The notes beneath the pieces are model-generated. The model searched no databases, was not told the DNA's origin, and saw only the letters and a program-made list of their open reading frames with translations. From Trichoplax adhaerens (taxonomy: Eukaryota > Animalia > Placozoa): a stretch of 64,000 nucleotides of DNA. The position numbers were made by a program, and so were the translations under genes. This document shows, one piece after another, positions 18,201 through 61,870 of this stretch. Position 1 is the first letter of the stretch. Each line of letters opens with the position of its first letter. The DNA is taken from positions 186,001 through 250,000 of the forward strand of contig NW_002060973.1 in the NCBI RefSeq assembly GCF_000150275.1. Direction: 5' to 3'.

Positions 18201-21200
18201 ATACCGTTTTTTTGCCTTTAGCATAGGCATCTTGAACCATGTGTAATGCTCCATCGCAGGTTTCGTAAACATCGCAAGACCATAAAGCGCAATTGATATG
18301 TACCCATTTATCGATATCGAGGTTTAATAATCTTTCAGAATCGAGACGAAAAAGTTAAAATTTTAAGTTGTTGTATACATTTTAACAATGTCAATTACAA
18401 TCAAACACCTAACAAACCAGTAACTGTTACCTTCCTCTATATTCTGGAGCCCCGTCACCAAATTCGGAACAAAATTCACAGCATCTTTTATCACAGATAT
18501 GTTCGGGAGGAGATATTGTTGACTTTAGTTGTAGGTATAACTGAAATTGAAGTGAAAATTGGCATTTTTATGCTAGGTAATAATACTATGTAAAATATCG
18601 CAAAGATTACATATTAATTAATGATGAATACCTTATAAGACAATGACTCATTACGATCCGCTTGTGGTTTCTTTTCAAACGATTGCTTCCAATGTTTCCA
18701 ACGTAACGATTTACGTCTCCTCTAAAAATTTACAGATGTAGTCATATTAATAGTGTAAGGTAAGGGAGTTACTGTTAAACAAGATATGTTAAATAAAATT
18801 AAGTTCAAACTAACACTTGCATTCAATTTTGATAGTGTGCCAAGTGTGCTAGATTTAGTCCCTCCCTCTTCATATTGCTTATCTGTTAAAAGGTCAGTAT
18901 TAAAATTAGCTACACCTTCGCTATCTCCACATAAACTCTTCTATAAATAAAAAAATTTTTAAAGTGTGCCCTACTGTAATTACCGAAACTATTATCATGA
19001 ATTTCCATGGCTTGGTTACTATCCCGGATCTCGTCCTTTAACTCTATAAATATCAAATTGTAGGCGATAGTAAATTTTAAGCTATTTCTATTATTTGCTG
19101 TTACAATGTCGTAGGACCTTAAGTTAGTTGGCAAATCTGTATAATTGAAAACTGATGTAATGCTAATAAGATTATTTTATTGAGCTTCGGAAAAATTTCA
19201 TTAAATTTAATAACAATTATTTTACACACCTTCTTTTAAGGTGCTAGCAGGTTCTATTGCAGCATCATTACCTGCTCGAGAAAGAATCTCGTCAGTGTTG
19301 GTCGCTTGGTCACTTTCTTCTAATGGGAACTCCACATCTGAAATTTGTGGCGAACTTATAAAATCATCTTCAATATTTGTTTTTATTTCATTTGCGCCAG
19401 TAAGTCCATCATTGGATTTTAATTTTGGAAGAACGGGTTGAAACGCTAATTTATTTTCTCCACTTCCAGATATATCTGTTACGATGGATTCTTCTGTATC
19501 ATATTGAGTTTGAAGAGGATTGGAAGTACGTGGGCTCCTACCGTGTGCTAATTTTTCGCCTTGAATTGCGTCAATAGGGAGAAGTATCGGAAGTTCAGAT
19601 GAGATATTAGACGAAAGACTCGATGGAATACGAGAACGAAGTTCAGGCGGCGTGCTAGATGAGCGATTTGATGTTGGTAGATCGGATATCAAAGGATCAT
19701 CGTTTATCAGTACTTTGTCTACAATATCTTCTGGAGATGAATCATGCTGAACAAAATCTGCAGTGGTTTTAGAGCAGTCTTGCATTGTGCTATCTACGGG
19801 AGACTGAATAGAGGCATCTTCTATTTTTATCTCCGTTTCTTCCCTTTTCATTATGTTGAGGACATCATCATTGCTGTTCTGATATCCTTTACATTCATCT
19901 CCATCCGTCGACACATTAGTCCTATCTTCAGTTTTAGTTCTTGTGTCTTTCAATTCATGAATAGCCAATACACAATCTTGCGATTCATTTGGTTCAGCTA
20001 ATATAGAGTTAGATGCTTCATATTTATTGACAAATGAATCTAATTCATTGTCTTGGTGTGCACTATCGCTCATGTGACTTATTGTCGAAAAGTCTTTTTC
20101 CTCACTTAAAATAAGTGAACAACCTTGAGATTCTGATAGATTAATCATTATTGGTTCTGAAACTTCAGGAAGCTGTAGACCTTCAACTGCAGTATCCATA
20201 ATACAGTCGTCATGCTCTACTTGTTGGCAGTCGTTAGTTTCATTACAATCGTTTTCTTGGATGGCATTGTCCTTTTTTGGTGAGCTATTGCCGTCATGTT
20301 GTTTTTTACTATCGTTCATGGCTTGATTGTCATGTTCAGTTTCTATATTTTCATCTCCATCTGTAACATCGTCAGGAAGAGGAGCCATAATATTGTCAGG
20401 TAATTCTAGATCTGCTTCGTTAAATGGCGCTGTTAAATCATCCACTAGAGAATTATTTTTCTTAGTTTTACTATAAGCGATTTCCTCCACAATAGGATCC
20501 TTTATATTTTCCTTTTGATAACTTTGTAAATGTTCTTTAGCTCCCACTAAAACTTTTTGTCGTAAGTCCGTTGATTTTGCTTGTTCTGAAAATTTATTTA
20601 ATGCTTCAATCTTAGCTCTAGTAATCGGATCTGTAACACTCGTTGGATCGATCGAGGCTAGGCTATCTGCACTCTCCTTTCCTTGTTTACGACTTCTATT
20701 GCGCTTAGATTTCATTTTATTGGAAGTCATACCGCCATCGTTGTTATGGTCTCCAGCGGTGGAAGAATTCACATATACTGTTGGATAAGTTGGACTAAAT
20801 GGGCTAGTGGCTTGCATACCAGTATTATTGCCTCTATTGTTGTTAATAGGATACATGACGTTCATATTCTGCGGAGGGAGGATTTGATTTCCAATCATCA
20901 TTCGAGGAGAATTCTGAATGATAACATTATTTGATGGATTGACGTGAGCCATGGGTACAAATTGTTGCGGTAGTTCCATAGTGCGCTGATTTGGAACTGG
21001 TACCCAAGCTCGTATCGTTGGAGATTGATTGTAAGCGGGACTAATCTGTTGATTCCATTGATTGTTACTATTTAAAGTCCGTTGATTTGTGGGCGATGGT
21101 AAGACACGCGGTGGAAATGTAAATCGTGGTTGCATCGCAGCTTCTGTCCTATTCGGAGTTGATGGCAAATTCCTAGGCGTAGTATCATCCGTTCCTATAG

Positions 21201-24200
21201 CATGCATATTATTTGGCACTGGCATTACCATGTTTTGCTTTGGTAATTGCGTAGGAAATCGAATGGGACCTGGCGGCTGATTATGACTTAGCGGTGTCGC
21301 GAAAAAACCTTGCTTTACTTGTACCATGTTGTCACGATTAGGCGTCGAATTATTAGTTGTAGTAGATGGAACATTATGATATGGAACAACACCTTGAGAA
21401 TTATTGCTTGGCCAAGCTGGACGCACAGGAATTTCATTATTTGGAATGGCCTGAGCTGGATATCGATAAGTAACTATACCAGGCCTAAGTTTGGACTGAT
21501 AGTTGTTGGCATTCATAGCAGGGCGAATATAAAATCCATTGGTATTAGGCTGATTTACTGGTATCAATTGATTGCCGGTATTTGCCTGATTTTGTGGCCA
21601 TGGCTGTTGCATTGGCCGGATACCACTAGGTTGTGGAGTACGATAAGGATTCATACCTTGCTGAATATGCATTGACTGGTTATAACCATTTTGTTGATTT
21701 ACAGTTTCTTTATAAATACCGACAGGAGATTGATTGCGAGGTCTAATTTGCTGTTGATACTGGTTAAATACAGGCACAGATTGATCGCGTTGTGATGCAG
21801 AGCTTACTGTAAAGTTGGAATTGTCTGCTGTATTGGAATTCATAGTCCTAGGAATAGTTATCGTTTGTTGCTGATATGTATTTGTAACAACGGGTGCTTT
21901 ATGACATACGATCGGTTTAGGAACTGGCGTAAGATAACCATTGAGCTCTGGATGCCCTCCATTCAATTTGTACTGACCACTCTGAAGACTTTTCTGATTA
22001 CTGTTAACGCTTGTGGTCGTACCAGATACTTCATTCTTTGCATTGGCAGTAATAGCCCAGATATTACTTAAACGACTCCATGACGCAGTGACGTTTACAG
22101 GACTATCTCTCTTAGGGATAAGAGAGTTTGGTAATCGATCACTAATTACAGGATGAGAAATCGGCGGTGCTTGAGGGATTAGTATTCCCTCATCTTCTAC
22201 TTCTTCAATTTTGACGGCTGTTCTATCGTTTGTTGATTTCGAAGTAGTGTTCATTAATTTCCGATTTTCTTTAGCTTTTGATGTATATTTAGCTCTCTCT
22301 GATGGCTCTAACTTACGCCATAACCTTTCCATCACCTTAATCCTAGCTGTTATTTCTGGGTATTCACTCTTTAAATTTGGATAAATCAGATTTGCGTACA
22401 GGATAGAAGCCATCGTAGATTTATTTCCTAATGCTTCTTCGCGTTGGCACTTCATTATTTGACTGGTTTTTGCCATCTGGTTGTGTAAGCCAGATACAGA
22501 ATGAGTGGCATCGGTTTGTAATTCGGTATGATGCAGGTTATGGGGATAATTAATGTCATAAAAATTTTGAATATGAGACGTTGTTGCAGCAATGACTCCG
22601 TTGGTTTCATTGATATTCTTTGCTTGGATGGATTCCTTAGTATCGGAGCAATCTTCCAAAATATTAAATACATCATCTACTTCTATGCTGCCATTTAATA
22701 TGTCTTCGCCAATATTACCACAGTTATTGAGAATACTATCAATAATTTCATGAGGAAATTCGTCACTACCTCTGGTCGATTCTTTACTACTAAAGCCACT
22801 GCTACCAATAGAAGGAAGATGATGCGGTCGAAGCAATGGATAATTTGGATCATTACTATCCTCTAAAAAAGAATTTGGAAGGTAGGCTACATTCTGATGT
22901 TGGTGATCTTGCGGTTGAAGGTAGTGATGATATGGTAAATTATGACCTTGTTCTCCATTAATTTGATCATTGTATCGTATTGAAAAATTGTCGTCTAAAA
23001 TAGGCGATAATGTCTGATCATTGTCATTCATACTTTTCTTTATTACTTTTTTCTTCTTTCGCTTTTTTAGTAATCCATTATCATAACCCCTTTTCGATTT
23101 TTTAGTATTGATTAAGTAGGAATTCGAATCAAGGATATTAGACTTCTTCGCTTTATTTGTATGCTTCAATTTAGCAGCCAGTTTTTTCTCACGGATAAGT
23201 TTTTTCTTATCTACTTTCGCCTTAAATGTCTTTATGGTAGGAGTATCGCTAGTGTTTTCCTCACCCCATGCCACTTTTCGCTTCTTTTCTAATTTTTTCA
23301 TGTATGTAATCCCGTTCTTCGTCAACACAATTTTCGATACGATGAATCTACTCTTTGTAGATTTTTTTAATCGACCGCTACTTGGACTGTTATTTCCATT
23401 ACTGCTTTTTAAATGAATAAAAGGTATATCTTCAGATAACACCGATCCAGCACGTATTGGATTAAATTGGTCGAAATCGCTGGCTTCATAGCCTGCTTTA
23501 CGGTTTTTAACTTTATTTCCTTCATAAATATAATAATTTACTAATTTGTTGCACAAGAATACGTTAGGGTCACAAAGGGAGCATATAAAATCAATATCAG
23601 AGTACATTTTAGCATCATTTTCGTTATGGATACCTTCACAACTACCATGTAACCACCTAGTACGTGAAATAAAATGTAGGTAAGTAGTGGAAAGATATTC
23701 AGACAAAATCTGCATTAAACAACGTAATTAAATACTCTGCTTTTTTAACTACTAATCTGGTACGCTAATTGATAATTAATTAATACTAGCTAGCAGTCAT
23801 ACCTATCACAGTTGTTACATTGAACAATTATATCATCATTAACATATTTTTTGTTGCATTTTGGGCAAACGGATGTACTGGCACATGGACCACATTGAGT
23901 ATAGTTGGATGTCCACTGACAGTTAATCCCAGGAAAGTTGCTACCGCAATCATGGCATGAAACACAACTGAAAAAGCGATATAAAAGTATAATGTTATCG
24001 ATATATGACATTTTAATTAAATTCCTAATAGTTTACAATCTAAGATAAATATAATTACAACATATCCTACCGATGGCATTTCCATTCTCCTTCCGGAACC
24101 TTGTCCAATTGTGGGTTCAAACAATATGTATGATAGCTAATATCACACTCATCACATAGTAGGAGACGATCTTCATCGCCTGCCTTACCACATCCTTCAC

Positions 24201-35796: not shown

Positions 35797-38700
35797 TTAA
35801 ACAAAGGTGGAAAATGCAGAATTATTGGGGTTAATAGTACTAGCCGGACTTCCAGGACGGCTACTTCGTAATGTAGGAGCATAGCTGTTGTTACCATGAT
35901 AAGAAGCTGCTCCGTCATACCGTACATCGCTATAATCACCCATAAACGAGTTAACATCGACGTTACTTCTTGCAGCTTTCAATTCACCATATTCACCAAT
36001 GAAAGAACCATCTTCATTAAATTTGGATAACTGAGGTAAGTCTGCGTATTGATCCATACTATCCAGACTGTCCATGTCGACATCGCTATGTCGAAAATGA
36101 TCGTCTGCATAATGACTTTCTTCAGGCAAAGGTGGTCTCTTGACTTCTTCCTCAGGTTCATCAGCTGGCAGTGGAGGAACATCAGGCTTCTTTTCTTGCT
36201 CATGAGGAGTTACGTAGCGGCCAGTAGACTTCATTGTATTCCTCTTTCGACCAGATCGAACAAAGCATACCAGAATTAAGATCACTAGCAGTCCACCTAC
36301 TGAACTAACTAAAGCGATAAACCAAATTTCTTCATAAAACGGCTTTTGCTCTGCTACCACTGACCTTGTCGTCACGTTAACCTGATTACTTGGCACACTG
36401 ATTATATTTCCACCTACAGCAACAATGTGGAATGCATAAGTTGTCGATGCTTTCAAATCACTTGCTGTAAAGGCACGAACTGTTGGACTAAGTAAAGAGG
36501 AAGTATTTTGATGAGGATCATTCGAAGCTAACAGCTTGTGTTGAACGACAAATCCTTCGGTTGGATTCTCAGTGGCTTCCCATTGAAAGCTAACAGTAGT
36601 TTGTGTCACTTCCGTTGCTTTTAAATTTTGTGGTTGCTCTGGACCAATCCCATTAACCTGGAACTGAACTGTTGTTGGAACTCCATACCCGTTAGCATTT
36701 TGTGGTGTCACCGTGAATCGATAAACACCAGTCTTCATATTGTAAAAGGTAAATAGAGTCTCGCTTCCAGCAGTTGTGTTAGCAGTATATGAACCAGGGA
36801 GACCCTCGACAGTTAAGACGGTATAATTCACTTTATAATGTGTAATAGCACCATTAGAGGCACTAGGTGCGATCCATTGCACTACCACTTGGCTTCTGAC
36901 CGGTTCCGATGCAACTAAATTGGTAACTTCATCTAAAATTAATGATAATAATCGCATTTCAGTCACTAATTTCTAAACTAGGATAGCGAAAAGTTTCAAA
37001 TAGGAAAGAATCTACTCTTGACTGAATAAGCCGGTATACCACTGAATATGTCACCATCAAGTAGAATGATAGATTGTATAAAAAAGTAACTTGGATACAA
37101 TTTTGTATTTTATTTTAAGTATTACCTGGTACTGGTAAATGGATGTATTTAGAAACTGTCGGTGAGAAAGGACCGTCTCCACCTTCAGTAAATGCATTTA
37201 TCCTGAAGTTATAGGTCATATAACGTCTTAAATCATTTATTGAAGCTTCCGCAACATCACCGAAAGTACGGGTAGTAGCGACAGAATTATCATATGTCCA
37301 AAAAGAAATCTGTAAGGCAAATGCGAAACCAATACATTATTTTAGTCAATGTACTTAACAAATGGGAAAATTGTTAAAACTATTATTGTCACCTACACAT
37401 TACTAACTACACTATAACCCTATAAATAAATATTAACTTATTATAGCCTTATTAACATTTACTGAGGTTAAGTAGACGATTAAACGAAGTAGTACGGTAG
37501 TTTTTTTCAATTTCAAGATAAATCAATTACATTCCAAAGAATTAACCATTAGCTACATATTTTGCACCCGGTTCATCAAACGTTTCTTTGATTTTTATAT
37601 AAAACATATATTATACAGTCAAAATATTGAGAGATTAACAAAACTCACTCGGTATCCGACCGCTGTTGCTCTCGCCGATTTTGCTACTGCAATTTTAGAC
37701 CATCTTAACTTAACTGAAGTAATACTGGTAAGATAAGCCGTAACATCTTTAGGAGCCGCCGTAGGTGCTGTGCTACCTGTGGTAGCAGTGATAATCTCGG
37801 TTGCTGCTCGCCCAAATCCGGCGTTATTAAACGGTTGCAATCGTAGCTCATAGCGAGTGTTTTGAGCTAAACCTGCTAGACGATATGTACCAGTAGTACC
37901 AGTATTGACATTCGACCAAGATTGTGTGGGTCCTTGTTGTCTAAAAGATAACCTATAATTAATACCTGCGTCATTTTGTTCTTCTCGCGATAAGGGTACA
38001 AAGCGGATATCCAAGGCCCCAGAATTGCCGGTTACACCACTAACCCGAAATTCGCCCGGTGCGTTATAAGGTACGTCTCCAAGTGTGGAAAAGATCTGAT
38101 ACGTGCTATCTTGACTTGCTCCTACAGCATTAACAGCGACTATCCTAAAGCGATAGGTATTAAACGGTGAAAGAGCAATTCGACGGAATGTAGCCGAAAC
38201 CGGAATGTAATCTTCTGCTATTCTCCATGAATTAACATTATTGACGCGATAATGAATTGCAAATCTTAGCAATGGGCTATTATTAGGATTACCAGGTAGC
38301 CATGAAAATAGAACTGACGATCGTGTCAATTCGCTATAAGTAAAATTAAATGGTGGATTGGGTACGTCATTGACTGTTAATGTTGCTAACGATGGATTAG
38401 CTACGTAGCCAACATAAGGTACGTTAGTTGCCGCTACACAGGCAAATTGGCCCGAATCACTTAACGTACTATTGTAATAACTTAATGTTGAAGTCAAACC
38501 GTTGGTTCTTACAGTAGCTCTACTAGTAGTGATATTTTTGCCTTCCCTTTGCCAATAAAGTACGACATTCAAGCTATCAGCCTTCTGAACGGTACAAGAA
38601 ATAGTAAAGTTTTTAGGTCGGCGTATAAAAGTCGCAGCTAATGGCTTAGTAAAGACGGTCGCACTAAGCACAACGGCTGTACCAGTAGCGTCGGTTGTTC

Positions 38701-40171
38701 CATACCGATTGGTAGCTGTACACTTATATTCTCCAGCATCACTATCTACTACATTGTGTATCACTAAATTTCCATTCGGTTTAACGGTATATTTGTTGTA
38801 CAATAATTTATCAACAAATCCTCCGTCTTTAGTATAAGTCATGTCAGGCCTCGGACCTCCGGTAACAGTACAACGGATGGTAGAACTTTGTCCTCGAAAT
38901 AATGTCGTTTGTGTATATGGGACTTCAACAAATTTGGGCGCTGCTACGGTAACATTCAGCCAGCCCGATGATACTATATTGGAATGCTCATTATAAGCTA
39001 GACAAGAATAGACTTTGGTATCTCCTCTAACAAGACTACGTATGGTCAATGAGCCATTCGCATTGAGAATGTATTTGGTACTTTGGACAATGCGTTGACC
39101 ATTCATATACCACCTATAACCAACGGTAGATCCACTAGCGACGCAAGGCCAATTAAAATCTGATTCGACAGGTTGATCCGTATCACTTATAGCGGTTATC
39201 CATTTAGGATCAACATGAACCTTAAGTCGAGCACTTGCTGTTACTTGACTACCACCAGAAATGGCTGTGCACTGATAGACACCATCATCGACTTCTGCAA
39301 TGTCTTTTAGGACGAGATGGCGACCATATTGTTCAAATGAATAACGATTAATAGGGAGTGTGCCTGTACTTTTTTGCCATATGATTGTTGGTATAGGATA
39401 ACCGACTGCAATGCATTCTAATATAACTCGTTTTTGGTTAAGATTAGCTATAGTATCATTCGGTGGGACTATGATTGAAGGAGCAACCGCTGGAACAGCA
39501 TTAATAGTAAAATTCAAGTATTGTTCACCACCCGTGTTTCGAGTTTCTGATGACGAGCTACTCTTAGGATCGAATACATTAAATATGGTATTGCAACGAT
39601 AAGTCCCAGTATTATTCTTCCAACCTGATATAAATATTAAATCTCCTGCATATATACTTAGTGCAACACGTTCACTTTGAGCAATAACAGAATTATCAGC
39701 CATAGTCCAATAAATTAGATCGGGTCTTGGTGATGTTTCAGATGGGATTTGACAATGCAATCTAGCATTTTGGTTAATTTTGCGATAAAATTTTTCAGAA
39801 ACACCAGGCATAAAAGGTAAAAATCGAATTTGTAAAGTGGCTTCACGGCTGATACTGGTACCAAAGGCATTGGTAGCTAAGCAGACATACTGGCCCGCAT
39901 CCGCTAACACAATTCCGGAAAATGTTAAATTACCACCAGATAATTTAATACGGTTGTCGAATTGGAGATTTTGATCATTATGTCTCCATGCATAGGTAAT
40001 TGTTCCATCACCAGTAGCGGCACAAGGTACAATTACTCCTTCATCATGTGTGCGTGATATTGCGAGTGCATCAACATAATCGATCGGTTGAACAGTAATT
40101 TCAGGAGCTTTTAGTCCCAAGGCTGTAGCGATAATGCTAGTTAACATGAGAAAGATGAAAGATCGATTCAT
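35797..40171 (-). CDS. L1CAM: L1-family cell adhesion molecule (neuroglian/L1CAM/NrCAM-like), copy A: signal peptide, 6 Ig, 5 FN3, TM, ankyrin-binding tail
   Basis: Three exons: 40171-37649, 37309-37126 (ISFWTYDNS..YNFRINAFTEGGDGPFS) and 36932-35797. Signal peptide MNRSFIFLMLTSIIATALG; six Ig domains with C..W..DxGxYxC-type patterns; FN3 repeats; TM WFIALVSSVGGLLVILILVCFV. The tail DSMDQY..FNEDGSFIGEY matches the L1-family FNEDGSFIGQY signature; C-terminus STFV. The symbol denotes the family, not 1:1 orthology. Confidence 0.93.
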
Positions 40172-46069: not shown

Positions 46070-49000
46070 TCAGATTAGGTGGCGCTCTTTTCGATTTTGG
46101 TTTATCTGAACGACACGAATATAAGCAAAGTAAATCACTGATATAACTATTAATCCGCCAAATGAAATTAATAAAGCTATGAACCAAGTTTGGTGATGAA
46201 GTATCGGTCCCATGCTTTCTGAAGGCTTTGTTATAACATTAATTTCGTTACTGTATAAATCTAAATGACTTGCACTTAAAGCGAAAATACGAAATGTATA
46301 TGTTGTTGATGGTGCTAAGCCAGTTACTGTATAATAGCGCACTTCTGGCCCTAACATTCCGCTCACATTTTTAAACAAATAAGAGGAGAGTTTATATTGA
46401 ACAACAATACTTGACCGATAATGTCTCCAACAGTCCAAGATAAATGAATAAAAGTTCGTTCAATAGCAGTCGCTGCTAGCCTGATCGGTGCTAAGATATT
46501 AGCAACTTTATGCCGAATAGTTACTGGAACACCGTAACCATGGATATTGCGTGCAGCAATAGTAAATTGGTAAATGCCTAATTTCATGTTATTTAAAATG
46601 GCTGAGGTCTCGTTTCCTGTAGTATTCTTGGCGATAGTTTTTCTTGAGTTGCTTTGGTTACCAATTAATTTATAATTAATTTGATAAGATTGAATGATGC
46701 CATTAGTAATAGCGGGTGCCAGCCACTGCAGAATTAGCTGATGTGATAACATCTGGGAAGATGTAAAGTTGGATATTGAATCTGTAAAAACAGGATGATG
46801 CTCTTCAATATTTAGGAATAAAGTTGTAGCTTTTAATGCAGTAATTAGTCACGATATCTATTTGATAGAATATATTTAATTAGCATAATTGAGTAACTTA
46901 TTATACTATTCAATTTAATAGCTCTTGTTATTCACGCAATTTCTAGAGAATATCATTCTAACTTGCAGTGTTAGTCGGTTCCAACAGATATCATAGATTA
47001 TTATTTATCTCACTCTCTCAAATCATAATTTTAATTCTTTTTATATCTCTGTATGGAATAAGGAAATGCAACCTAATCTCTGATTCTACTGCTGAACTTT
47101 AATTGTATCCTTTTACAACAGATATCATGAAGCTACTTATATTAATTTTATTTTAGAGAATATCCATTCCACCTATTAAATTGCCCTATTTCATCAGATG
47201 ATGGATTATTAATTATAACTTCTTTTAACTGTATTAATATTATTTTACCTGGGACTGACCGACTAATGTATTGGCTAACTGTTTGCGAAAGCAAGCCATC
47301 ACCACCACAGTTAAATGCATTTATTCGAAAATGATAGCTAAAGTTATGCTTTAAATGATTCATAGTTGCTACGTTGACATCGCCTAAAGTTTGGGTCTTG
47401 GCAATGGATTGATCATACGTCCAATATGAGATCTAAAAGGATTCGGTAGTAGAATAAAAATGACTATCAACTAATTAGTCAGTGACAACTATAAACTTAA
47501 TCGATATCGTCATTAAAGACCTTGATATACATCTATTAAATAGTCTTGAATGCGCTACCACTTAATAACATCTTCGCAAAGGGTACAGGTAGTATAAATC
47601 ATTAAATGCGGTAACCTTGAATATGCAAAGGCAATAATATTTTTGCTACGGACAAAGCAAGTATGATATTACGGTTATTACTTAATTACTATTGCTAGTT
47701 CATCAGAATTGCTATTTAAGACTGTGATGTGAACGTATTCAATGATCTCGAATGTGCAGATCTATAGAAATTATAGTAATTGGGTAGATATTAATATCAA
47801 TTTTATTAGCAATCCTATTTACGGCATCTATACTTGTATATGTTATAGGTGAAATATCTATAATTCTTGAATGTGACTAAAGATGACAACATTTTTGCAA
47901 GGTGCTAAGCATGTATCATAGCCTTAGATACAAAATTTGCAATTAGAAACGAAATCATGATTTACAAATGATAGTCAAGATTTACCATTTCTATGAATAA
48001 GAGAGAATATTATATCGCTTACTCGATATCCTATAATTTTCGTGCCCATCGAGTTTCCTAAGGCATCCGTTGACCAAACTAACTTTACGCTATCGTTACC
48101 AATAACATAGACCTGAAAGTGTTCAGGTATTAAGGTAGGTGCTGCAACACCTGTCTTAACAGTAACAGTGTGCGTCCATTCTTTCCCCAATCCAATATCA
48201 TTAAATGGCCGCAATCGCAGCTTGTAAACAGTATTCTCCAATACACCCGTTAGACGATAAGAGCCATTATTGCCAATATTAATAAAAGACCATGATGATG
48301 AAATTGCTTGTGGCTTAAATTCAAGTAGGTTATAAATATGTGGACCGTTCATTTCGTCTCGTGATAATGGCTTATAGCGAATTTCGATAATAGCTCCATC
48401 TGCTGTTCCACTGCTAGCTCGAAATTCGCCTGGGGAATGATAAGGAATATCCACATCAGTATGAAATGTGAGACTAGGTGTAATTTTGCTAGAACCTACG
48501 CCATTGATAGCAATTAGTTTAAAATGATAATAATTATATGGCGATAGATTTACTCGATGAAATGTAGCCCAAGGTGGTACATCATTTATTGCTACTCTCC
48601 ATGGATCATTGCTCAAGCGATTCGAATTGACTCGATAGGTTAAGCCATATCTTAATAATGGACTGTTATTAGAATTACCAGGCAGCCATGATAACACTGC
48701 CGATGATGCATTCACCTGGTTATATCTAAAATCGCTTGGACTATCTGGTATATCATGAACCGTTAACATAGCTGATGATGATTGCGTTTCATAGCCAGCG
48801 AAAGGCACGTGAGTAGCAACGAAACATGAAAATCGTCCCGAATCACCCAGCGAACTGCTGGAATAAGTTAATGTTGTGGTTAAACCGTGAACATTTAATA
48901 CAGCTTTCTGTGTTGTAATGTTTTTACCTTCTTTTTGCCAATAAAATACTACATTCAGGCTGGGATCCTTTTGAATTTGGCATGATAAAATAAATCCTTG

Positions 49001-50569
49001 TGGCCGACGTACAAAAGTCTTGGTGAGAGATTTTGTAAATGTTGTTGCAATCTTGATCACAGCACTACCCGATACTTCAGCAGTTCCATAACGATTGCTG
49101 GCGATGCACTTGTATACTCCAGCATCGCTATCTTGCACATGATGGATGATTAAATTGCCATTTAGTTGGGCCGTATACTTATTATGTAATTGTCTATCTA
49201 TGGTTCTTCCATTTTTAGTGTACTCTACAGTCGGGCGAGGACCACCAGTCACTGTACAACGAAGAGTGGCATTTTGTCCTCGAAAAAAGGTTGCTTGCGT
49301 GTATGGACTCTTAATAAAAGTAGGTGCTGCTACTATGACGTTAAGATAGCCCGATGAAACAATATTGGAATGGTTATTGTAGCCTTGGCAAGAGTAAACT
49401 GCAGCATCTGAAGGAGAAAGGTGGCGTATCGTTAAGGATCCGTTGGCATGAAGGTTATATTGCGGACTACCACTAATACGTTGACCGTTACGGTACCATT
49501 TATACTTAATGTCGAATCCACTCACTGAGCAAGGCCAAATAAAATCCGATCCAATCGGTTGATTTGTATTTGTAATGGAAGCTTTCCATCGAGAATCGAT
49601 TGCAACCCTAAGTTTAGCGCTAGCACTAACTTGTTTGAAGCCCGAAAATGCTATACATTGATATTCTCCTGCATCGGCTTCTTGGATGTATTTGAGTACA
49701 AGATGTCGACCGAATTTTTCAATCGAGTAGCGGTTATTAGGTAAAGGACCCAATTTCTTTTGCCACAGAATTGTTGGAATAGGATAACCTGTCGATATAC
49801 ATTCTAATATAACTCGAACCTGGCCAAGTATGGCTATAATATCAGTCGGTCCTTCTTCAATTTTAGGGGCAAAACTAGGCGTAGCAGACGTGGGGATTTT
49901 GAAATAAACATGTTGAGCAGCACCAGTAAGTTTAATTTTTGTTGAAGATCCCGTAGTTGGATCGAATAATTTGAAAATTACATTACATTTATACGATCCA
50001 GTGTTGTTTTGCCAACCTGCAATAAAGATTAGATCGCCATCGTATTCATTTATGGCGATAGAAGTTGTTTCTGGTACTCTACTGTCATCACTTGCAGTCC
50101 AATAAATTTGACTCGGTTTGGGCATACGCGTAGTTTGATTGGAAATTTGGCACCTTAAACGAGCACTGCCATAACTAGATTGGATGATATTTTCAGAAAT
50201 ATTGCGAAGAGAATGTACAACGCTAACCTGAAGAGTAACTTCACGACTGATACTTGTGCCGTAGAGGTTGCTAGCCAAACAGATGTATTTACCATCATCA
50301 CTTGCAGTAATATTCGCCACGCTTAAATTTCCATCAAGAATTTTAATACGGTCATCTAATTGAATAGGATTACCGTTATGTCGCCAGGCGTAGGTAATAT
50401 TGCCACTTCCAGTAGTTTGACAAGGGATAACTACTTTGCCACTACCGGTGGAATAAATTGCGTGCTCGTTCATAAAATCAATTGGTTGTATAGTTATAGT
50501 AGGAGAGTGCAATGCAAGAGCAAGGGTACTAGTAGCCAGAACGAAGGCAAGCAGAGATCGCTTCATCAT
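46070..50569 (-). CDS. L1-family paralogue, copy B: 6 Ig + FN3, 1-nt frameshift in the last FN3 and no FIGxY tail (possible pseudogene, secreted form or sequence error)
   Basis: Same three-exon layout as copy A: 50569-48023 (MMKRSLLAFVLATSTLALA...), 47432-47249 (ISYWTYDQS..HFRINAFNCGGDG) and an exon starting at 46781. Similarity to A switches frame at ~46410 (ORFs 46363-46752 and 46070-46438). The TM WFIALLISFGGLIVISVIYFAYI is followed by only ~14 residues before the stop. Confidence 0.85.
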
Positions 50570-51529
50570 TTGATTTTCTCTTCTGTAAAGGAAAATACGC
50601 GTATACAGAGAAGGTAACCGCAGAAGGTATGCCACGCTTTCCAGCAATATTGGCACTCAATCAACCTAGAAGATTACGCGATAATGAAGAAACTTGGATT
50701 CTTTACATTTTTCCTTAATTCATTTCGAAGTAAAAACTGTAGTTTTAAAAATGGTGCCAATATTATTTATTAGAAGACACAAGCAGATATAGAAAAGCTA
50801 GATGATGATGATATTCTTTTATGTAATTAGATTAACGCGAGCATAAGAATATCTTGTCAGTTCTAAAAATGATCGATGATCGATTTTTTGTAGGCCGTAT
50901 CGATCCCAGGCTGACAGAAAGTAGTGGATCAAGATCAGTTATTGGCGGTTTTCAGTTACTAATGGCAATTAAGGATTAGATTGATGGAACTCGAGCTAAT
51001 ACCTATAAGAGCTGATTTTAAAGATACAAAATCATTTACTCTTTAAACTTCCTATAGTTTAGTCTAAGACAGTTCTCAATTTAACAATTGAAGGCGATTA
51101 TTGTTGCCTACCAGAACTACAGCGAAAGCAATTGTTAGTAACCACCTGTTAAGGTAGCATAAAACCAATCTTGAAGATGCATTCAACAACCGTCCTTCTT
51201 CAATGCCTTAACTAACCGAATTCGCATTGATCGTGTTGACCCAATTAATAAATACGTATAAATTTAAAATTTCAGTGCAACATGCCTAAGATTTATGTAA
51301 ATTATAAAATGCTGTTTTCTTCCACGTGAATGGTACCTTCTTTCTACAATCTACTACTTTCTTAATTAAAATAATCACTATTGTTTTACGATTCAATAAA
51401 GTTGTTATTACTTCTAGTTTCCGCGTATGTACAGGTACAGCAATGCTATATGCATATGTAAAAGTTGCTCCTTTATCCAATACAAACCGAAAATTGAATT
51501 CATATTGCAGTAAATTTCAGCCGTTTGAT

Positions 51530-54270: not shown

Positions 54271-55138
54271 GAGACTGAAACACAGACTGTTCAATTGAAA
54301 ATTCAAGGGACATCCTATCAAAAGATTATAAAATTATCGTGCAAAAATACAATATCCCTGCAAGTAGACATACTGTATAAGCGTAAATTACAAATAAAGA
54401 TAATGATGGCAAAATAAATTAACATTTGATGTTGTAGTAATATTGTATTCATAGTGTTATAGTCCTTTTTTTGCTTCTTTTAAAGGTGATTAAAGTAATT
54501 ATAAATGCACCTATAGTGATCAATATCCTTTGGAGGATACTAGTCTACTCATGATAATACAGGATAGATATTTCATTAAATAAATTGGATGCACTCTACT
54601 TTAGCAACTGAAAATTTGTGGTAATTTGTCAAAGTATATTCATTTCTAGACTACACATTTCTAACTTGCTTTTGTAAGGTTAATTATTTGTCATTACTTC
54701 AAGATAGTCATGGCTGCATCAACGATTAGGCAGGCCTCTATTAAGCGATCAATATGGACTGTGGAAGTGTACACTGGTGCATAGTACGAGTGAAGGATAT
54801 TTATCAGCGGCTTATAAAATCATATTATACCGCTGAAAATATTGATAAATAACATTTAGTCATGTTAGAGTGAAAAATTACAGCGTAGTGGCCTTAAATA
54901 TGCAAATTTCTTCGATTTTTTTATTTCATGTACAGTATATAACATATATAAATAAGCGCAGATAAATCGATTCCAAGTAATTGTTTAATAATATACAATA
55001 CGAAATACCCTTTATATCAACGATTACAGTTTCGCTAGAATAGAATGAACAGATCGCAATTAATTTTTCAATCTCTAAATACTTCTTATTTAAAAATAAT
55101 AATTATAATGTAGAATATATCATAAAATAAAATCCTTT

Positions 55139-55401
55139 TTATCTTAAAGTAGAGCTAATAACCGAAATAATATCATTCCGATCTATCCGTTGCAAAGCTG
55201 CCGTCAGTTGATCATAGGTATTGGTCTTATTTATACAAGTTTTTCGATACCACTTATCGAGAACTTTCTTTGCTCGATCGAAAATTTGATGCTCTTGACT
55301 TCTGATAACATCAACATCAATGGATGGATCTAAAATTGTAGCTAATCTTGTCCAATCAGTACCAATTTTATCTGCAACTTCGAAAAAGTGTTCCTTGGCA
55401 T
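55139..55401 (-). CDS. Death-domain exon (not in ORF track)
   Basis: After acceptor 'attatag': DAKEHFFEVADKIGTDWTRLATILDPSIDVDVIRSQEHQIFDRAKKVLDKWYRKTCINKTNTYDQLTAALQRIDRNDIISVISSTLR*. It shows the Death-fold hallmarks (V/I)AxxxGxDWxxLA, an LxxW helix and T..L..AL..I.R.DI. Confidence 0.85.
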
Positions 55402-58400
55402 CTATAATATAACATTAATATTGCAAATAAATTGAAATGAAAATAAAGAAACAAGGCATTCCTGATATAGGTGCACTCCTACTCTTTCATGAGGCCCGTC
55501 GTGATTTTAAATGATGGCTTGTCCATACAAGGACGTTGCTACATTTATAGACTGCGAAATATAGCATAAAACCAAATTGAGCTGTCTATGCGTTGAGTAT
55601 GAGGAAGTGGTCGGATACAAAAGCACAATAAAATAAAATACATATGGGTTGGTTGGCTAACTTCATAAGTAATATTGTAAACCATGCAAACATTAAAGTA
55701 CTCCTGCTTTCCAATGCTATTTACGAGATCATATCCTTTTATTAAAGGTAGTGAGTGTATAATGAGAATTAAGAACTAGATATTATTCGTGAGTGTATCT
55801 TTGCTGATGTTTAACAAAATCCAACAATGATTATACTGTATGTACTTGTATATAGGGGGTATAACATTGGTAGTAAGACATTTTTATAGAGCGCTACTTC
55901 ATGATATATATTTTTGTATATATGCAGTTCAGCAGCATTTGCATTAAATATTGCATATTTGGTCCTCGTATTTAGTTAACAAAAACTGGATGCATAGCAG
56001 CAACACCCCTTATACTGCCTATATCTTCCACTCACCGCATGCATTTGCTATTCTTTTCTTTTTACGAGAAGTGCAATCATGTAACGAATTTGATTCAATC
56101 GGCCCTTTACGTTTGTCAAAATGAATGTTATCAGGTGCTTCTGCAAAATAATTATAGACACACTGTATCATCTTGTTTTACTTAAATCACTCAATCAATT
56201 TTTCTACTTATTACCAACCATTAAAATTTTCAATTGCCCCTTTTCCTTTATTGATATCTTTGTTAGTCGATTTATCTTCAGATTCAGATTCATAGTCATT
56301 TAGACTAAGATCTACTAGATAGTATAATGGCAGTTTTATATTATTTATTCCGCTATATTCTTTTAAAGCGTAATTTGCTCGGCTTTGTCGATTCAATCAT
56401 TTTAAAACGTAAATTGACAGGTTAAAAATAATAGTATAGTTGTTACGGTAAGTTTTCTTTTCTAAATTAGTACAATAATTTAAAATCATGTAGCCATCCT
56501 GTTGGTAGGAGAGTTTTAATCAAATAGCGCTACGTTAATGCTAATGCTGCATTTTATTTGAAAAAGAGGCGTTACAACGCAAACAATAAAAGCCATTCGA
56601 AATAATTTATTTTTTTGTCAATGATGTTCTGCAAAGACGCAGATTTGTAGTATTGAGTGATATATTATCGATCTAATAATCGTACGGTTGAACGGATTTA
56701 AAATGATGTCCTATTTTGACAAATTTTTTTCAACATTTTTATCGTAAAACAAAGATAGTAACCTAAAGCTGTCGCTGTTCAATTATATCACCAACTTGCC
56801 CTTAAGCTGCACCATATAGCATTAGCTTAAGCTACTATCCTTTACCTTATATGAACATTATGAATAAAATTCTTGAAATGAATTGAATTGTTCTTTTTAA
56901 TTTAGATGCATTCACGAATTTGGGTCAATAAGTCAGCATACAGGATTATCCTTCAGTATTTAGTGACCTGATTCAATACTGTGTTTAGACTTACCATAAC
57001 GTTGTTTGCTGCTATTATTTTGTTTTCTACTTTGACTTTCTTGTCCATTTTCTATTGCTAATGACCAAAATAAACCGATCAGAATGAGGCAAAATGGATC
57101 AAAAATGGGCTAGAATAGAGTTAAAATATACAAGTCACCTGAAGACGATGTGAAATGGGAGTGAATGACTGGTTGATTGACTATATCTTGTTGCAAAGTT
57201 CGATGGATGATGTTAGCTATTTCTGATCGATTAGTCTCCCTCTCTTTTTCTTGTAATTGATCGCGGCATTGGGTAATTTGTTTTTCATCTTCTGCAATTT
57301 GAGGGTAATTTTCTCCATAGCGATTGCGTAGAATTTTGATAGACTTTTGATAGAATGAAATTGCTTGAGGATAATTCGACTGGTGATGATTGACTACGGC
57401 TTGATTTCGATAGCATTGCGCAGTATTAGGATGATTCTCACCTAATGTTGCTAAGAAAACCGTCAATGACTTCTTATACATCGATAGAGCATCCGTGTAT
57501 TTCTCTTGCCCATGATAAACATGCCCAATGTTACTATAGGTTGTAGCAATATCAGGATGATTGTTAACAAAGTGTGCTTGTTGAATCTTGAGTGCTTTGT
57601 TACACATTGATAGAGCATCATCATATTTGCGTTGATAATCATAAACGCTTGCAATATTGTTATATGTTGTTGCAATGCTTGGATGATTGTTGCCAAATTG
57701 TTCTAGTCGAATATTCAGCGATTTATTTAACGAGGACAGAGCATCATCATGCTTGCCTTGATAATGGTAGATTTGTCCCATGGTGTTATAAGTTATAGCA
57801 ACATCGGGATGATTGTGCTTAAGTTTTACTAATTGAATCTTCAATGATTTGTTCAATATTAATAGAGCCTCATCATACTCACCTTGATGATAATAAATAC
57901 TTGCAATCTTGTTGCGTATTTTTGCAATACTTGGATGATCGTCATCAAGTTGTGCTAGTTGAATTTTGAGTGATTTGTTATACATTGAAAGAGCGTCGTC
58001 ATACTTGCCTTGATGATGATAGATACTAGCCATATTGCTATATGTTGCTGCATTATTTGGATGATCGTCACCAGGTTGTGCTGGCTCAATCTTAAGCGAT
58101 TTGCTCAACATGCTTAGAGCTTCTTCATAGTTGCCTAGATGATTATAGGCACTTGCAATATTGTTATAGATTGTAGCAATATTTGGATGGTTGTCATCAA
58201 GTTGTGCTAGTGCAATTTTTAACGATCCGCTCAATGTTGATAGAGCGTCGTTATACTTGCCTTGATTGATATAGACTTGCCCAATGTTGTTATGTGTTAT
58301 AGCAATACCTGGATGGTTGTCACCAAGTTGAGCTAGTTGAATCTTGAGCGATTTATTATACATTGATATGGCCTCATCATACTTGCCTTGATGATCATTG

Positions 58401-61400
58401 ACAAGCGCTATGTTGTTATATATTGTAGCAGTACTAGGATGATTTTCACCAAGTTGTGCCAGTTGAATAGTCAGCGATTTGTTCAATATTGACAGAGCAT
58501 CATCATACTTGCCTTGATAATCATAAACTTTTCCGATGCTGCTATATGTTAAAGCAACATCAGGATGATTGTCACCAATTTGTACTATTTGAATCTTAAG
58601 CGATTTATTCAATATTGATAGAGCATCATTATACTTGCCTTGATGATAATAGACACTGGCAATGTTGTTATACGTTGTAGCAATATTTGCATGAATGTCA
58701 CCAAGTAGTGTACGTTGAATATTTAGCGATTTATTATACATAGGAAGAGCATCATCATACTTACCTTGACTATAATAGATTTGCCCAATGTTAAAATATA
58801 TCATAGCATTATCAGGATAATTGTCATCAATTGCTGCTGGTCGGTTCTTCTGTGATTTAGTGCACATTGACAAAGCATCATCATACTTGCCTTGATGATG
58901 ATAGACATTTGCAATATTAATATATGTTGTAGCAATACTTGGATGATTGTCACCAAGTTGTTCCAATTGAATCTTCAGCGATTTGTTATACATTGCCAGG
59001 GCCTCATTATACTTGCCTTGATGATTATAGATTAGTCCAATGCTGCCATATGTTGTAGCAACATCGGGATGATTTTCACCAAGTTGTGCTTGTCTAATCT
59101 TGAGCGATTTATTATGCATGGATTGAGCATCATCATACTTGCCTTGATGATCATAGACAACTCCAATGTAGTAATATGTTGCAGCAACACTAGGGTGATT
59201 TTCACCTAGTTTTGTTAGTTCAATATCGAGCGATTTATTCAATATTGAGAGAGCGTCATCATACTTGCCTTGATGACTATAGACTTGTCCGATGTTGCTA
59301 TATGTTATAGCAACATCGGGATGCTTGTCACCAAGTTGTGCTAGCCTTATATTAAGTGATTTATTATACATGGATAGAGCATCCTCATACTTTCCTTGAT
59401 GGATATAGAAGCTTGCAAGGTTGTTATATGTTGTGGCAATACTTGGGCGATTTTCATCAGGTTGTACTGGCTGAATCTTAAGTGATTTATTATACATTGA
59501 TTGAGCGTCATCATACTTGCCTTGATGATCATAGACACTTGCAATATTGCTGTATGTTGCAGCAACATCAGGATGATTATCACTAAGTAGTGGTAGTTGG
59601 ATCTTTAATGATTTATTATACATTGATACAGCATCGTCATAATTGCCTTGACGATCATAGACAAGCGCAATGGCGTTGCATGTTTTAGCAATACTTGGAT
59701 GATTGTCACTAAGTTGTACTTGTTGAATCTTCAGTGATTTATTAAACATTGATAGAGCGTCATGATACTTGCCTTGATGATCATAGACACGTGCAATAGT
59801 GTTATAGGTTGTAGCAATACTTGGATGATTTTCACCAAGTTGTGCTAGTCTAATCTTTAGCGATTTGTTATATATTGATAGAGCATCTTTATAATTGCCT
59901 TGATGATCATAGACACGAGCAATATTATTATATGTAGCAGCAATATCAGGATGGTTGTCACCAAGTTGTGTTTCCTGAATCTTAAGTGATATGTTATGCA
60001 TCGATAGAGCATCATCATATTTACCTTGATGATAATAGACACTTGCGATGCTGGTATATGTTGTAGCAATACTCGGATGATTGTCACCGAATTGGGCTAT
60101 TCGAATATCCAGCGATTTATTCAATGCTGACAGAGCATCTTCATATTTGCCTTGATAATCGTAGATTTGTCCAATGCTGCTATAGGTTTTAGCAACATCA
60201 GGATGATTATCACCAAGTTTTGCTCGTTGAATCTTCAATGATTTGTTTAATATCGATAGAGCATTATCATACTTGCCTTCATGCTGATAGACACTTGCAA
60301 TATTGTTGCGTGTTATTGCAATACTTGGATGGTCGTCATCAAGCTGTGCTTGTTGAATTTTGAGTGATTTGGTCAATATTGAATGAGCTTCATCATATTT
60401 GCCTTGACTACTATAGACTTGTCCAATGTTACTACTTGTTACAGCAACATCGGGATGATCGTCACCAAGTTGTACCTGTTGAGTTGCGAGTGATTTGTTA
60501 TACGTTGATAGAGCATCATCGTACTTGCCTTGATTCCAATAGACACTTGCAATGTTGTTATATGATGCAGCAACATCAGGATGATTGTTACCAAGTTGTG
60601 CTAGTTGAATCTTGAGTGATTTGTTTAATATTAATAGAGCATCCTTATACTTGCCCTGCTGATTATAGATAAGCGCCACATTGTTATTGATTACAGCAAT
60701 ATCAGGATGATCGTCATCAAGATAAGCTTGTATAATCTTCTGCGATTTATGCAATGTTGATAGACTCTTACCATATTTACCTTGATGATAATAGGCACTT
60801 GCAATGTTGTTATATGTTGTAGCAATACTTGGATGATTATCACCAAGTTGTACTAGTTGGATGCTCAGCGATTTATTTAACATTGAAATAGCATCATCAT
60901 ACTTGCTTTGATGATTATAGATTTGTCCAATGCAGTTATATGTTGCAGCAATGTAAGGATGATTATTACCAACTTGTGCTCGTCTAATCTTGAGTGATTT
61001 GTTACACATTGATAGAGCATCATTATACTTGCCTTGATGATGATAGACAGCTGCAATGCTGTTATATGTTATTGCAATACTTGGATGATTGTCACCAAAT
61101 TGTGTTTGTCGAATACTCAGCGATTTATTCAACATTAAGAGAGCATCTTCATACTTGCCTTGATAATGATAGACTTGTCCAATGCTGCTATAAGTTATAG
61201 CAACATCGGGATGATTGTCACCAAGTTGTACTAATTGAATCTTTGATGATTTATCTAATATTAATAGAGCGTCATCATACTTGCCTTGATGATAATAGAC
61301 TTTTCCAATACTGTTATACGTTGTAGCAATGCTTGGATGATTTTCACCAAGTTGCACTTGTTGAATCTGGAGTGATTTGTTATACATTGATAGGGCGTCA

Positions 61401-61870
61401 TTATACATACCTTGATCATCATAGACATTGCCAATATTAAGGTATGACTGACTAATATTGATATCTTCACTTTCTAAGCATTTTAATTTCATTTCAAGCG
61501 ATTTCTTAAAATCATCTAAAGCTCCTTTCAAATCGCCTTGCAATCGTTTATTGCACCCCTGCCTATCTAAGCACTTTGAAATTTTCACTTCGTCTTGTGA
61601 TTGCTCGGCTAGTTTCTCTGCTTTTGAATTCCATTCATCGGCTTCATTCGATTTGTACTGCTTTAAATAGCAATCAGTAATGTCGAGAATAACATCGTAT
61701 TCAAGCTGATGCTTATCATCATTCTTGGATATCGATTGGATTTGAGTAACAGCTTCTTTGTAATAGAATAGCGCTTTTTCATAACTCCCTTCCTGCTGAA
61801 GTGTTAGACCTTTTTTGTAGATAGATTGGATATCGTCGATGACAGTCAATTCAGTTGACTCATTCGCCAT
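55139..61870 (-). CDS. TPR-repeat (42-aa, kinesin-light-chain/nephrocystin-3-like) protein with C-terminal Death domain
   Basis: Exon 61870-57139 carries 3 degenerate TPRs plus 33 x 42-aa repeats; donor TCA G|gtgact. Phase-1 exons follow: 57057-56995 (AIENGQESQSRKQNNSSKQRY), ~56312-56219 (DLSLNDYESESEDK..ENFN), 56140-56036 (EAPDNIHF..RKKKRIANAC) and 55401-55139 (Death domain, stop TAA). The TPR part is certain; the splicing is inferred from splice signals and phase. Confidence 0.85.
57314..61471 (-). repeat. Coding tandem repeat, 126 nt x33 (42-aa TPR units)
   Basis: Consensus DNHP(S/D)(I/V)AxTYxxI(A/G)xVYxxQGKYDDALS(M/I)(Y/L)NKSLKIQLAQLG. The period is exactly 126 nt from 61471 to 57314 with no indels. 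Confidence 0.97.

What the first reader, a model, noticed from the sequence alone, without database searches (positions are those of the whole stretch)
55139..61870. Hidden TPR-Death domain receptor: a 33-repeat TPR sensor spliced to a Death domain with no NTPase in between
The ORF track shows only a TPR protein ending at 57110. However, a donor at 57139 and four downstream phase-1 exons extend the frame through a charged linker into a Death domain (55401-55139). A repeat sensor plus death-fold effector is the logic of innate-immune and cell-death receptors: NLRs, Apaf-1, PIDD, and fungal NLRs with TPR sensors. Here there is no NACHT/NB-ARC domain, and the order is reversed (sensor N-terminal, DD C-terminal). 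This may be a minimal sensor-adaptor type of placozoan intracellular receptor that recruits DD partners such as FADD/RAIDD/MyD88/IRAK-like proteins. The exons and motifs are seen in the sequence; the immune function is inference, and I cannot confirm novelty without a search.
Basis: partly seen in the sequence, partly recalled or inferred. Interest (0 to 1): 0.85.

Follow-up and report, generated by a model that had tools for sequence, protein, structure and literature searches.

The report
Switch-less TPR–Death-domain gene, Trichoplax
This is a real, expressed Trichoplax gene that joins 33 TPR repeats to a C-terminal Death domain, but it is a member of the already published placozoan TPR-Roc-COR-Death family that lost its GTPase exons by a 3.3-kb deletion, not a new receptor class.

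Summary
The minus-strand ORF 61870-57110 (33 in-phase 42-aa TPR units) has a donor at 57139. Spliced transcript contigs from three studies join it to a 63-nt linker exon and to a Death-domain exon (55401-55139; Pfam Death 52.4 bits; model TM 0.80-0.85 to ankyrin and FADD death domains). Two further phase-1 exons (56314-56219, 56140-56036) are optional cassettes. The form present in all three runs skips them (1685 aa; long form 1752 aa).

No NTPase lies in the gene or anywhere on the contig. However, the closest paralogues (TRIADDRAFT_61714 and its tandem twin) have the same exon plan with an internal Death exon, a small exon and a 2.2-kb Roc-COR exon between the counterparts of exons 3 and 4. 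Here that 3.27 kb is missing, and the 78-nt intron 3 is the fused scar. The gene is therefore a GTPase-less deletion derivative of the published placozoan ROCO expansion.

Other ROCO-less copies exist: two on C1402, and H2 protein RDD37135.1. Some relatives carry decayed Death exons. This scan already described a similar switch-less gene on other DNA (s1-739330). Immune or adaptor function is inference only.

The parts
61478..61870 (-). Exon 1, start codon and N-terminal helical cap (aa 1-131), conserved as the protein start in paralogues
   Evidence: ATG is the first start after an upstream stop. Paralogue N-termini, including the H2 models, align from residue 1-2. There is a weak MIT/TPR-like Pfam hit at aa 18-70.
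57320..61477 (-). Exon 1, 33 tandem 42-aa TPR units (TPR_12/TPR_10, KLC/NPHP3-like), aa 132-1517, no indel
57139..57319 (-). Exon 1 tail (capping half-repeat plus charged coil) ending at the phase-1 donor CAG|GTGA; the ORF's own stop at 57110-57112 lies in intron 1
   Evidence: Joint 57139>57057 in X5, X6 and X9. The donor is conserved in L002, L006 and L008.
57058..57138 (-). Intron 1 (81 nt, GT..AG)
56995..57057 (-). Exon 2, 63-nt polar linker, phase 1-1; homologous to exon 2 of TRIADDRAFT_61714
56219..56314 (-). Exon 3, 96-nt acidic cassette exon, phase 1-1; counterpart of the exon that precedes the internal-DD/Roc-COR block in the paralogue
   Evidence: Joints 56995>56314 (X5) and 56219>56140 (X5, X6). 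It matches L007 9414-9321 at 81%.
56141..56218 (-). Intron 3 (78 nt), the deletion scar. Its 5' part matches the paralogue's intron after exon 3. Its 3' part matches formerly coding sequence of the exon-4 counterpart. The 3.27 kb between them (internal DD, small exon, Roc-COR exon) is absent.
56036..56140 (-). Exon 4, 105-nt basic cassette exon (KKKR patch), phase 1-1. Its acceptor lies inside sequence that is coding in the paralogue.
55139..55401 (-). Exon 5, Death domain plus stop codon (55139-55141), with a phase-1 acceptor tatag|AT conserved in paralogues
54983..55138 (-). 3' untranslated region, at least this far in the spliced contig
   Evidence: X6 record 14 runs 54983-55401 and X5 record 8 runs 54800-55402

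Best explanation
A transcribed Trichoplax adhaerens gene encodes an N-terminal helical cap, 33 TPR units, a short polar linker and a C-terminal Death domain. The protein is 1685 aa, or 1752 aa when two cassette exons are included. It descends from the placozoan TPR-(Death)-Roc-COR-Death ROCO family. A ~3.3-kb genomic deletion removed the internal Death exon, a small exon and the Roc-COR GTPase exon. It fused the flanking sequence into a 78-nt intron and forced use of a new acceptor inside the old exon 4. Because every exon is phase 1-1, the frame survived. These steps are shown. What follows is inferred. The protein most likely works as a switch-less scaffold or adaptor. The TPR superhelix would bind a protein or peptide ligand or partner, and the Death domain would join homotypic death-domain assemblies, possibly those of its ROCO paralogues, without GTP-controlled gating. 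It could therefore act as a constitutive adaptor or as a modulator or decoy of the ROCO-Death paralogues.
For: The gene structure and splicing are (three studies), with exon arithmetic. The domains are supported. The paralogue TRIADDRAFT_61714 has TPR, Roc, COR-A and Death domains and maps to C1389. Exons 2, 3 and 4 and the DD exon have homologues in that gene. At DNA level, window 56284-56191 matches L007 9414-9321 and window 56157-56020 matches L007 6051-5914, leaving 3.27 kb unmatched. That interval holds the internal DD and Roc-COR. Contig C1384 has no COR-A, NB-ARC or NACHT hit. The donor and acceptor are conserved across paralogues. The DD keeps every invariant or near-invariant family position. 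The family is published as at least 17 ROCO genes with TPR, CARD and death domains (PMC4104024). Further ROCO-less TPR>DD copies are L002 and L003 and the H2 protein RDD37135.1.
Against: Function was not tested. L009 and L013 are relatives with TPR ORFs followed by Death exons that carry stops, so loss of C-terminal modules may be ongoing decay. For the ROCO-less duplicates L002/L003, dN/dS is about 0.6 on few sites, which is only weak constraint. The strain variants seen in contigs are 5 nonsynonymous to 4 synonymous. The 5' end of the transcript was not seen in reads. No database protein for this locus was found, so there is no independent gene model.
Confidence: 0.8

Rival explanations
1. 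One reading: an independent, minimal sensor-adaptor class of innate-immune receptor (TPR sensor plus Death effector) that recruits FADD/RAIDD/MyD88/IRAK-like partners.
For: The architecture of repeats plus a death fold is real and expressed. The genome holds at least 110 Death exons and many death-fold partners. Fusions of adaptor domains to repeats without an NTPase are described in other invertebrate expansions (PMC8195603).
Against: It is not an independent class. The exon-by-exon homology and the deletion scar tie it to ROCO paralogues. There is no evidence of induction, of a ligand or of a partner. Kamm et al. found no clear IRAK in placozoans (PMC6321704).
Confidence: 0.12
2. A decaying remnant: after loss of the GTPase core the gene is still transcribed and spliced but is under relaxed constraint and heading towards a TPR-only gene or a pseudogene.
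For: Relatives L009 and L013 have stop-bearing Death exons behind intact TPR ORFs. A decayed Roc-COR-end/exon-4/Death relic lies in the same window at about 4235-5590 (+). dN/dS is about 0.6 in L002/L003. Exons 3 and 4 are skipped in the form seen in all three runs.
Against: A 5-kb reading frame is intact across three to five exons in an AT-rich genome. The DD keeps all conserved positions and folds confidently. The 33 repeats are perfectly in phase. The spliced form is found in three studies. ROCO-less copies were retained and recently duplicated.
Confidence: 0.2
3. Artefact: the Death exon belongs to a neighbouring transcript, or the missing Roc-COR reflects an assembly collapse.
For: The run type of the contigs is not on record as RNA, and contigs can chain neighbouring genes (caveats).
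Against: The joints are exact GT..AG, in frame, and found in three studies. The E3>E4 joint across the 78-nt intron is seen directly in two runs, so no Roc-COR exon sits between them in transcripts. There is only one 100% genomic copy of the tail.
Confidence: 0.03

Closest known systems
Trichoplax TPR-(Death)-Roc-COR-Death ROCO proteins, e.g. TRIADDRAFT_61714 (XP/EDV record, UniRef 'Death domain-containing protein'); family noted by Civiero et al. 2014 (PMC4104024)
   Same: The N-terminal cap, TPR_12 array, tail, phase-1 donor, linker exons 2-4 and C-terminal Death exon are the same. Identity is 53-60% at protein level, and DNA homology extends into introns.
   Different: This gene lacks the internal Death exon, the small exon and the whole Roc-COR exon (3.27 kb). 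Its TPR array is much longer: 33 units against about 14 in TRIADDRAFT_61714.
RDD37135.1 'Nephrocystin-3' of Trichoplax sp. H2 (P0048, 503 aa)
   Same: The architecture is the same: cap, TPR_12 repeats, short linker and C-terminal Death domain, with no Roc/COR.
   Different: It shares only about 37-40% identity, has about 6 repeats and belongs to a different branch of the family. It is not the orthologue.
ROCO-less paralogues on C1402 (L002, L003); probably the kind of gene in this scan's note s1-739330
   Same: Three-exon E1-E2-DD genes with no COR, equal to this gene's short isoform.
   Different: Their deletion is larger and has other breakpoints, so exon 3 and exon 4 counterparts are also gone. 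They have 873-aa and at least 1386-aa ORFs.
DAPK1 (human ROCO protein: kinase, ankyrin repeats, Roc-COR, Death domain)
   Same: The order is repeats first and Death domain last. The Death domain is of the ankyrin/FADD-like type by sequence profile and fold.
   Different: This gene has no kinase and no Roc-COR, and it has TPR instead of ankyrin repeats. The comparison with DAPK1 rests on general knowledge of that protein.
NLR/STAND receptors and Apaf-1-like proteins of placozoans (Kamm et al. 2019, PMC6321704)
   Same: They combine a repeat array with a death-fold domain, and they are lineage-specific expansions.
   Different: [quoted passage not shown] This gene has none of these NTPases and the opposite order.

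Membership tests
Death domain (Pfam PF00531, death-fold superfamily) | Sequence scores above the curated Pfam cut-off | tested here: met
   52.4 bits against a cut-off of 22.6, E 5.9e-14, covering profile positions 2-84 of 86
Death domain (Pfam PF00531, death-fold superfamily) | Compact all-helical death fold superposable on solved death domains | tested here: met
   The model has pLDDT 88.8. It reaches TM 0.85 and rmsd 1.4 A to ankyrin DD 2yvi, and TM 0.81-0.83 to FADD DD. The profile search of PDB puts ankyrin-3 DD at E 1.9e-15 and FADD at E 9e-15.
Death domain (Pfam PF00531, death-fold superfamily) | Homotypic DD-DD oligomerisation | not tested
   No complex prediction or experiment was run, because a generic DD-DD score would not name a partner
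TPR_12 / KLC-NPHP3-like TPR arrays | Tandem TPR pairs scoring above the cut-off | tested here: met
   TPR_12 scores 1268 bits in 23 stretches and TPR_10 scores 809 bits in 31 stretches. There are 33 in-phase 42-aa units.
ROCO proteins | Roc GTPase followed by a COR domain in the same polypeptide | tested here: not met
   tblastn with the paralogue's Roc-COR finds nothing between 61870 and 55139. There is no COR-A hit on contig C1384. The introns are 81, 680, 78 and 634 nt, too short for a 2.2-kb exon.
ROCO proteins | Common descent of the flanking modules with ROCO genes | tested here: met
   The cap, TPR, tail, exons 2-4 and DD are all homologous to TRIADDRAFT_61714 and its twin, with a mapped deletion junction
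NLR / STAND (NACHT or NB-ARC) receptors | Central NACHT or NB-ARC NTPase | tested here: not met
   Pfam finds none in the ORF or exons. There is no PF00931 or PF05729 hit on contig C1384, and no ORF of 60 aa or more in the 2 kb upstream.

The most novel reading that the evidence does not exclude
Placozoans repeatedly make switch-less TPR-Death proteins by deleting the Roc-COR exon from phase-1 modular ROCO genes. They retain these proteins as regulators, decoys or co-adaptors that plug into the death-domain assemblies of their GTPase-bearing paralogues. This would parallel CARD-only/PYD-only proteins or truncated plant NLRs, but on a ROCO chassis.
Probability: 0.2. Interest if true: 0.6.

Novelty: new variant of a known kind. 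Interest (0 to 1): 0.4.

Why it matters
It adds a well-documented gene model with exact exons, two isoforms and a mapped deletion junction. I found no database protein of comparable length for this locus. It shows how a phase-1 exon layout lets a large receptor-like family shed its GTPase switch without breaking the frame. That is useful for annotating the placozoan death-fold repertoire. It also frames a testable question: do ROCO-Death proteins and their switch-less derivatives form a death-domain signalling network in an animal that lacks classical NLR-LRR and IRAK components? It does not reveal a new kind of receptor.

Tried and rejected
- Exact-product look-up of the 1586-aa ORF found nothing on record.
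- Word-indexed protein searches with the N-terminal and C-terminal parts of the ORF gave no self or orthologue hit in the 872-2775 aa range, only paralogues.
- ESM Atlas look-alikes of the H2 TPR-Death protein gave only generic bacterial TPR clusters and no TPR+Death cluster elsewhere. This is uninformative about the range outside Placozoa.
- A literature search for 'TPR-Death', 'Death-TPR', 'DD-TPR' and 'TPR-DD' returned only unrelated papers.
The backbone is a polytomy and the window's gene has no supported sister. The different deletion breakpoints here and in L002/L003 fit either independent or serial deletions.
- dN/dS on L002/L003 and the variant counts from contigs rest on too few sites to decide between constraint and decay.
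- Contig depths were not used to quantify isoform ratios, following the tool's caveat. I report only which runs hold which joint.
- I did not run complex prediction, because a DD-DD pass would be generic and would not identify a partner.
- The spliced protein was not joined for any search or fold.
Full report
**What is there**

The window is G000:C1384:186001-250000 of a 105.6-Mb, 1414-contig genome. Database names of the paralogues identify it as Trichoplax adhaerens.

On the minus strand, ORF 61870..57110 encodes 1586 aa. Pfam gives TPR_12 at 1268 bits and TPR_10 at 809 bits, and no NTPase domain. Stacking the protein at a period of 42 residues gives exactly 33 units (aa 132-1517) without a single indel. 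They are preceded by a 131-aa helical cap and followed by a charged tail.

About 1.7 kb downstream on the same strand, the open frame 55399-55142 scores Pfam Death at 52.4 bits (E 5.9e-14, cut-off 22.6).

- A profile built from it and 39 relatives hits the solved ankyrin-3, ankyrin-1 and FADD death domains at E 1e-15 to 1e-14.
- An AlphaFold model (pLDDT 88.8) superposes on ankyrin DD 2yvi at TM 0.85 and rmsd 1.4 A, and on FADD DD at TM 0.81-0.83.

**Is it one gene?**

I laid Logan contigs of four runs from four studies on 54800-57600. Three runs (X5, X6, X9) hold contigs with exact GT..AG joints.

| Joint | Runs |
|---|---|
| 57139>57057 | X5, X6, X9 |
| 56995>55401 | X5, X6, X9 |
| 56995>56314 | X5 |
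| 56219>56140 | X5, X6 |
| 56036>55401 | X5 |

The fourth run (organism B) looks like low-coverage DNA and shows no joints. The run type is not on record as RNA, so the splice joints themselves are the evidence for RNA. The genome has only one 100% copy of the exon-1 tail, so a retrocopy is not the source.

The exons are:

| Exon | Coordinates | Length |
|---|---|---|
| E1 | 61870-57139 | 4732 nt |
| E2 | 57057-56995 | 63 nt |
| E3 | 56314-56219 | 96 nt |
| E4 | 56140-56036 | 105 nt |
| E5 | 55401-55139 | 263 nt, including the stop |

All are phase 1. The CDS is 5058 nt (1685 aa) without E3 and E4, and 5259 nt (1752 aa) with them. E3 starts at 56314. E3 and E4 are cassette exons that the form found in all three runs skips.

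Each exon was handled by reference.

**The 5' end**

- The ATG at 61870 is the first start after an upstream stop.
- The N-termini of the paralogues and of Trichoplax sp. H2 models align from residue 1-2.
- The 2 kb upstream hold no ORF of 60 aa or more.
- The whole contig has no COR-A, NB-ARC or NACHT hit.

**What it derives from**

The best database relative of the C-terminal part of the ORF is TRIADDRAFT_61714 (P0001, 1681 aa). It carries TPR_12, Roc, COR-A and a C-terminal Death domain and lies at C1389:277-286 kb next to a tandem twin.

Exon-by-exon tblastn shows that our E2, E3, E4 and Death exon all have counterparts in that gene. In that gene, E3 and E4 flank a single 2.2-kb Roc-COR exon.

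At DNA level:

- Window 56284-56191 matches L007 9414-9321 (81%).
- Window 56157-56020 matches L007 6051-5914 (75%).
- So about 33 nt here stand for 3.27 kb there.
- That interval contains an internal Death exon not included in the TRIADDRAFT model (L007 8822-9118, L006 6061-6360), a small exon and the Roc-COR exon.

The homology on the 3' side extends upstream of our E4 acceptor, into sequence that is coding in the paralogue (a short aromatic motif). In other words, the present acceptor is an AG inside the ancestral exon. This argues for deletion here rather than insertion there. The donor before the ORF's stop (CAG|GTGA) and the phase-1 acceptor of the Death exon (tatag|AT) are conserved in all copies examined.

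**Family context**

The genome has at least 110 Death exons and at least 49 COR-A places. Civiero et al. 2014 reported at least 17 ROCO genes in T. adhaerens with TPR, LRR, CARD and death domains (PMC4104024). Kamm et al. 2019 screened only NACHT/NB-ARC proteins (PMC6321704).

ROCO-less TPR>Death copies also occur at C1402:505-514 kb and 575-585 kb (L002, L003).

- They are 95% identical to each other, including introns.
- They have a larger deletion with other breakpoints that also removed the E3 and E4 counterparts.

A 503-aa Trichoplax sp. H2 protein, RDD37135.1 ('Nephrocystin-3'), has the same architecture but only about 40% identity. Two further relatives (L009, L013) have intact TPR ORFs followed by Death exons with in-frame stops. 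A tree of the N-terminal caps is unresolved.

All TPR-ROCO-Death hits of the Death-exon search are from Trichoplax. More distant Death hits belong to other architectures in echinoderms and amphioxus.

This scan has already reported, on other DNA of this genome, a 'switch-less TPR-death-domain gene' (s1-739330) and the TPR-DD-Roc-COR-DD pair (s1-747279). My results agree with both.

**How it probably works**

Shown: the gene is expressed and spliced in frame, it has an intact Death fold, and it has no NTPase.

Inferred from general knowledge of TPR scaffolds and of death-domain assemblies (PIDDosome, Myddosome, Fas-FADD): the TPR superhelix binds a partner or ligand, and the Death domain enters homotypic oligomers. 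Without Roc-COR there is no nucleotide-controlled gate. The protein would therefore be a constitutive adaptor or scaffold, or a modulator or decoy of its ROCO-Death paralogues.

The long isoform adds an acidic segment and a basic segment (with a KKKR patch) between the TPR array and the Death domain. Their meaning is unknown.

The main rival is relaxed constraint after loss of the core.

- dN/dS is about 0.6 between L002 and L003.
- The contigs show 5 nonsynonymous and 4 synonymous strain variants.
- Relatives carry decayed Death exons.

Against this rival stand the intact 5-kb frame, the conserved DD positions and the spliced form in three studies.

**Verdict**

- The gene is a new variant (a GTPase-less deletion derivative) of a published placozoan family, with a mapped scar and two isoforms.
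- An immune function is untested.

Noticed in passing
window 4235-5590 (+): A decayed 3' end of another family member on the opposite strand. It holds the last ~42 codons of a Roc-COR exon with a GT donor (4235-4360), an exon-4-like exon (about 4652-4750) and a Death-like exon (about 5330-5590). In the Death-like exon the conserved Trp codon reads TAG. The intron between them is homologous to the intron 4 of L002/L003. No upstream Roc-COR body was found.
   Followed up: partly
window 19222-23715 (-): A 1497-aa open reading frame with no Pfam family at E<=1e-4. It is unusually long for an unannotatable frame in this AT-rich genome.
   Followed up: no
window 35797-40171 and 47975-50656 (-): Large exons encoding Ig (I-set/Ig_3), fibronectin III and a Bravo_FIGEY cytoplasmic tail. 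These are L1CAM/neurofascin-like adhesion molecule genes neighbouring the TPR-Death gene.
   Followed up: no
L007 8822-9118 (-) and L006 6061-6360 (-) (C1389): An internal Death-domain exon lies between the linker exons and the Roc-COR exon in TRIADDRAFT_61714 and its tandem twin. It is absent from the 1681-aa database model, so the true architecture is probably TPR-DD-Roc-COR-DD.
   Followed up: partly
L009 1173-1388 (-) (C1410) and L013 5951-6151 (+) (C1407): Death exons with in-frame stops and lost acceptors lie 1-2 kb downstream of intact TPR ORFs of the same family. They look like TPR-only genes with relic Death exons.
   Followed up: partly
L002 and L003 (C1402:505-514 kb and 575-585 kb): Two ROCO-less TPR>Death genes about 70 kb apart, in opposite orientation, are 94-95% identical through their introns. 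Their TPR ORFs differ greatly in length (873 against at least 1386 aa, with an assembly gap in L003). dN/dS is about 0.6.
   Followed up: partly
whole genome G000: There are at least 49 places matching COR-A and at least 110 matching Death, clearly more than the 'at least 17 ROCO genes' in the 2014 review. Many Death exons appear in databases as stand-alone 70-130-aa 'proteins', which suggests widespread fragmented gene models.
   Followed up: no
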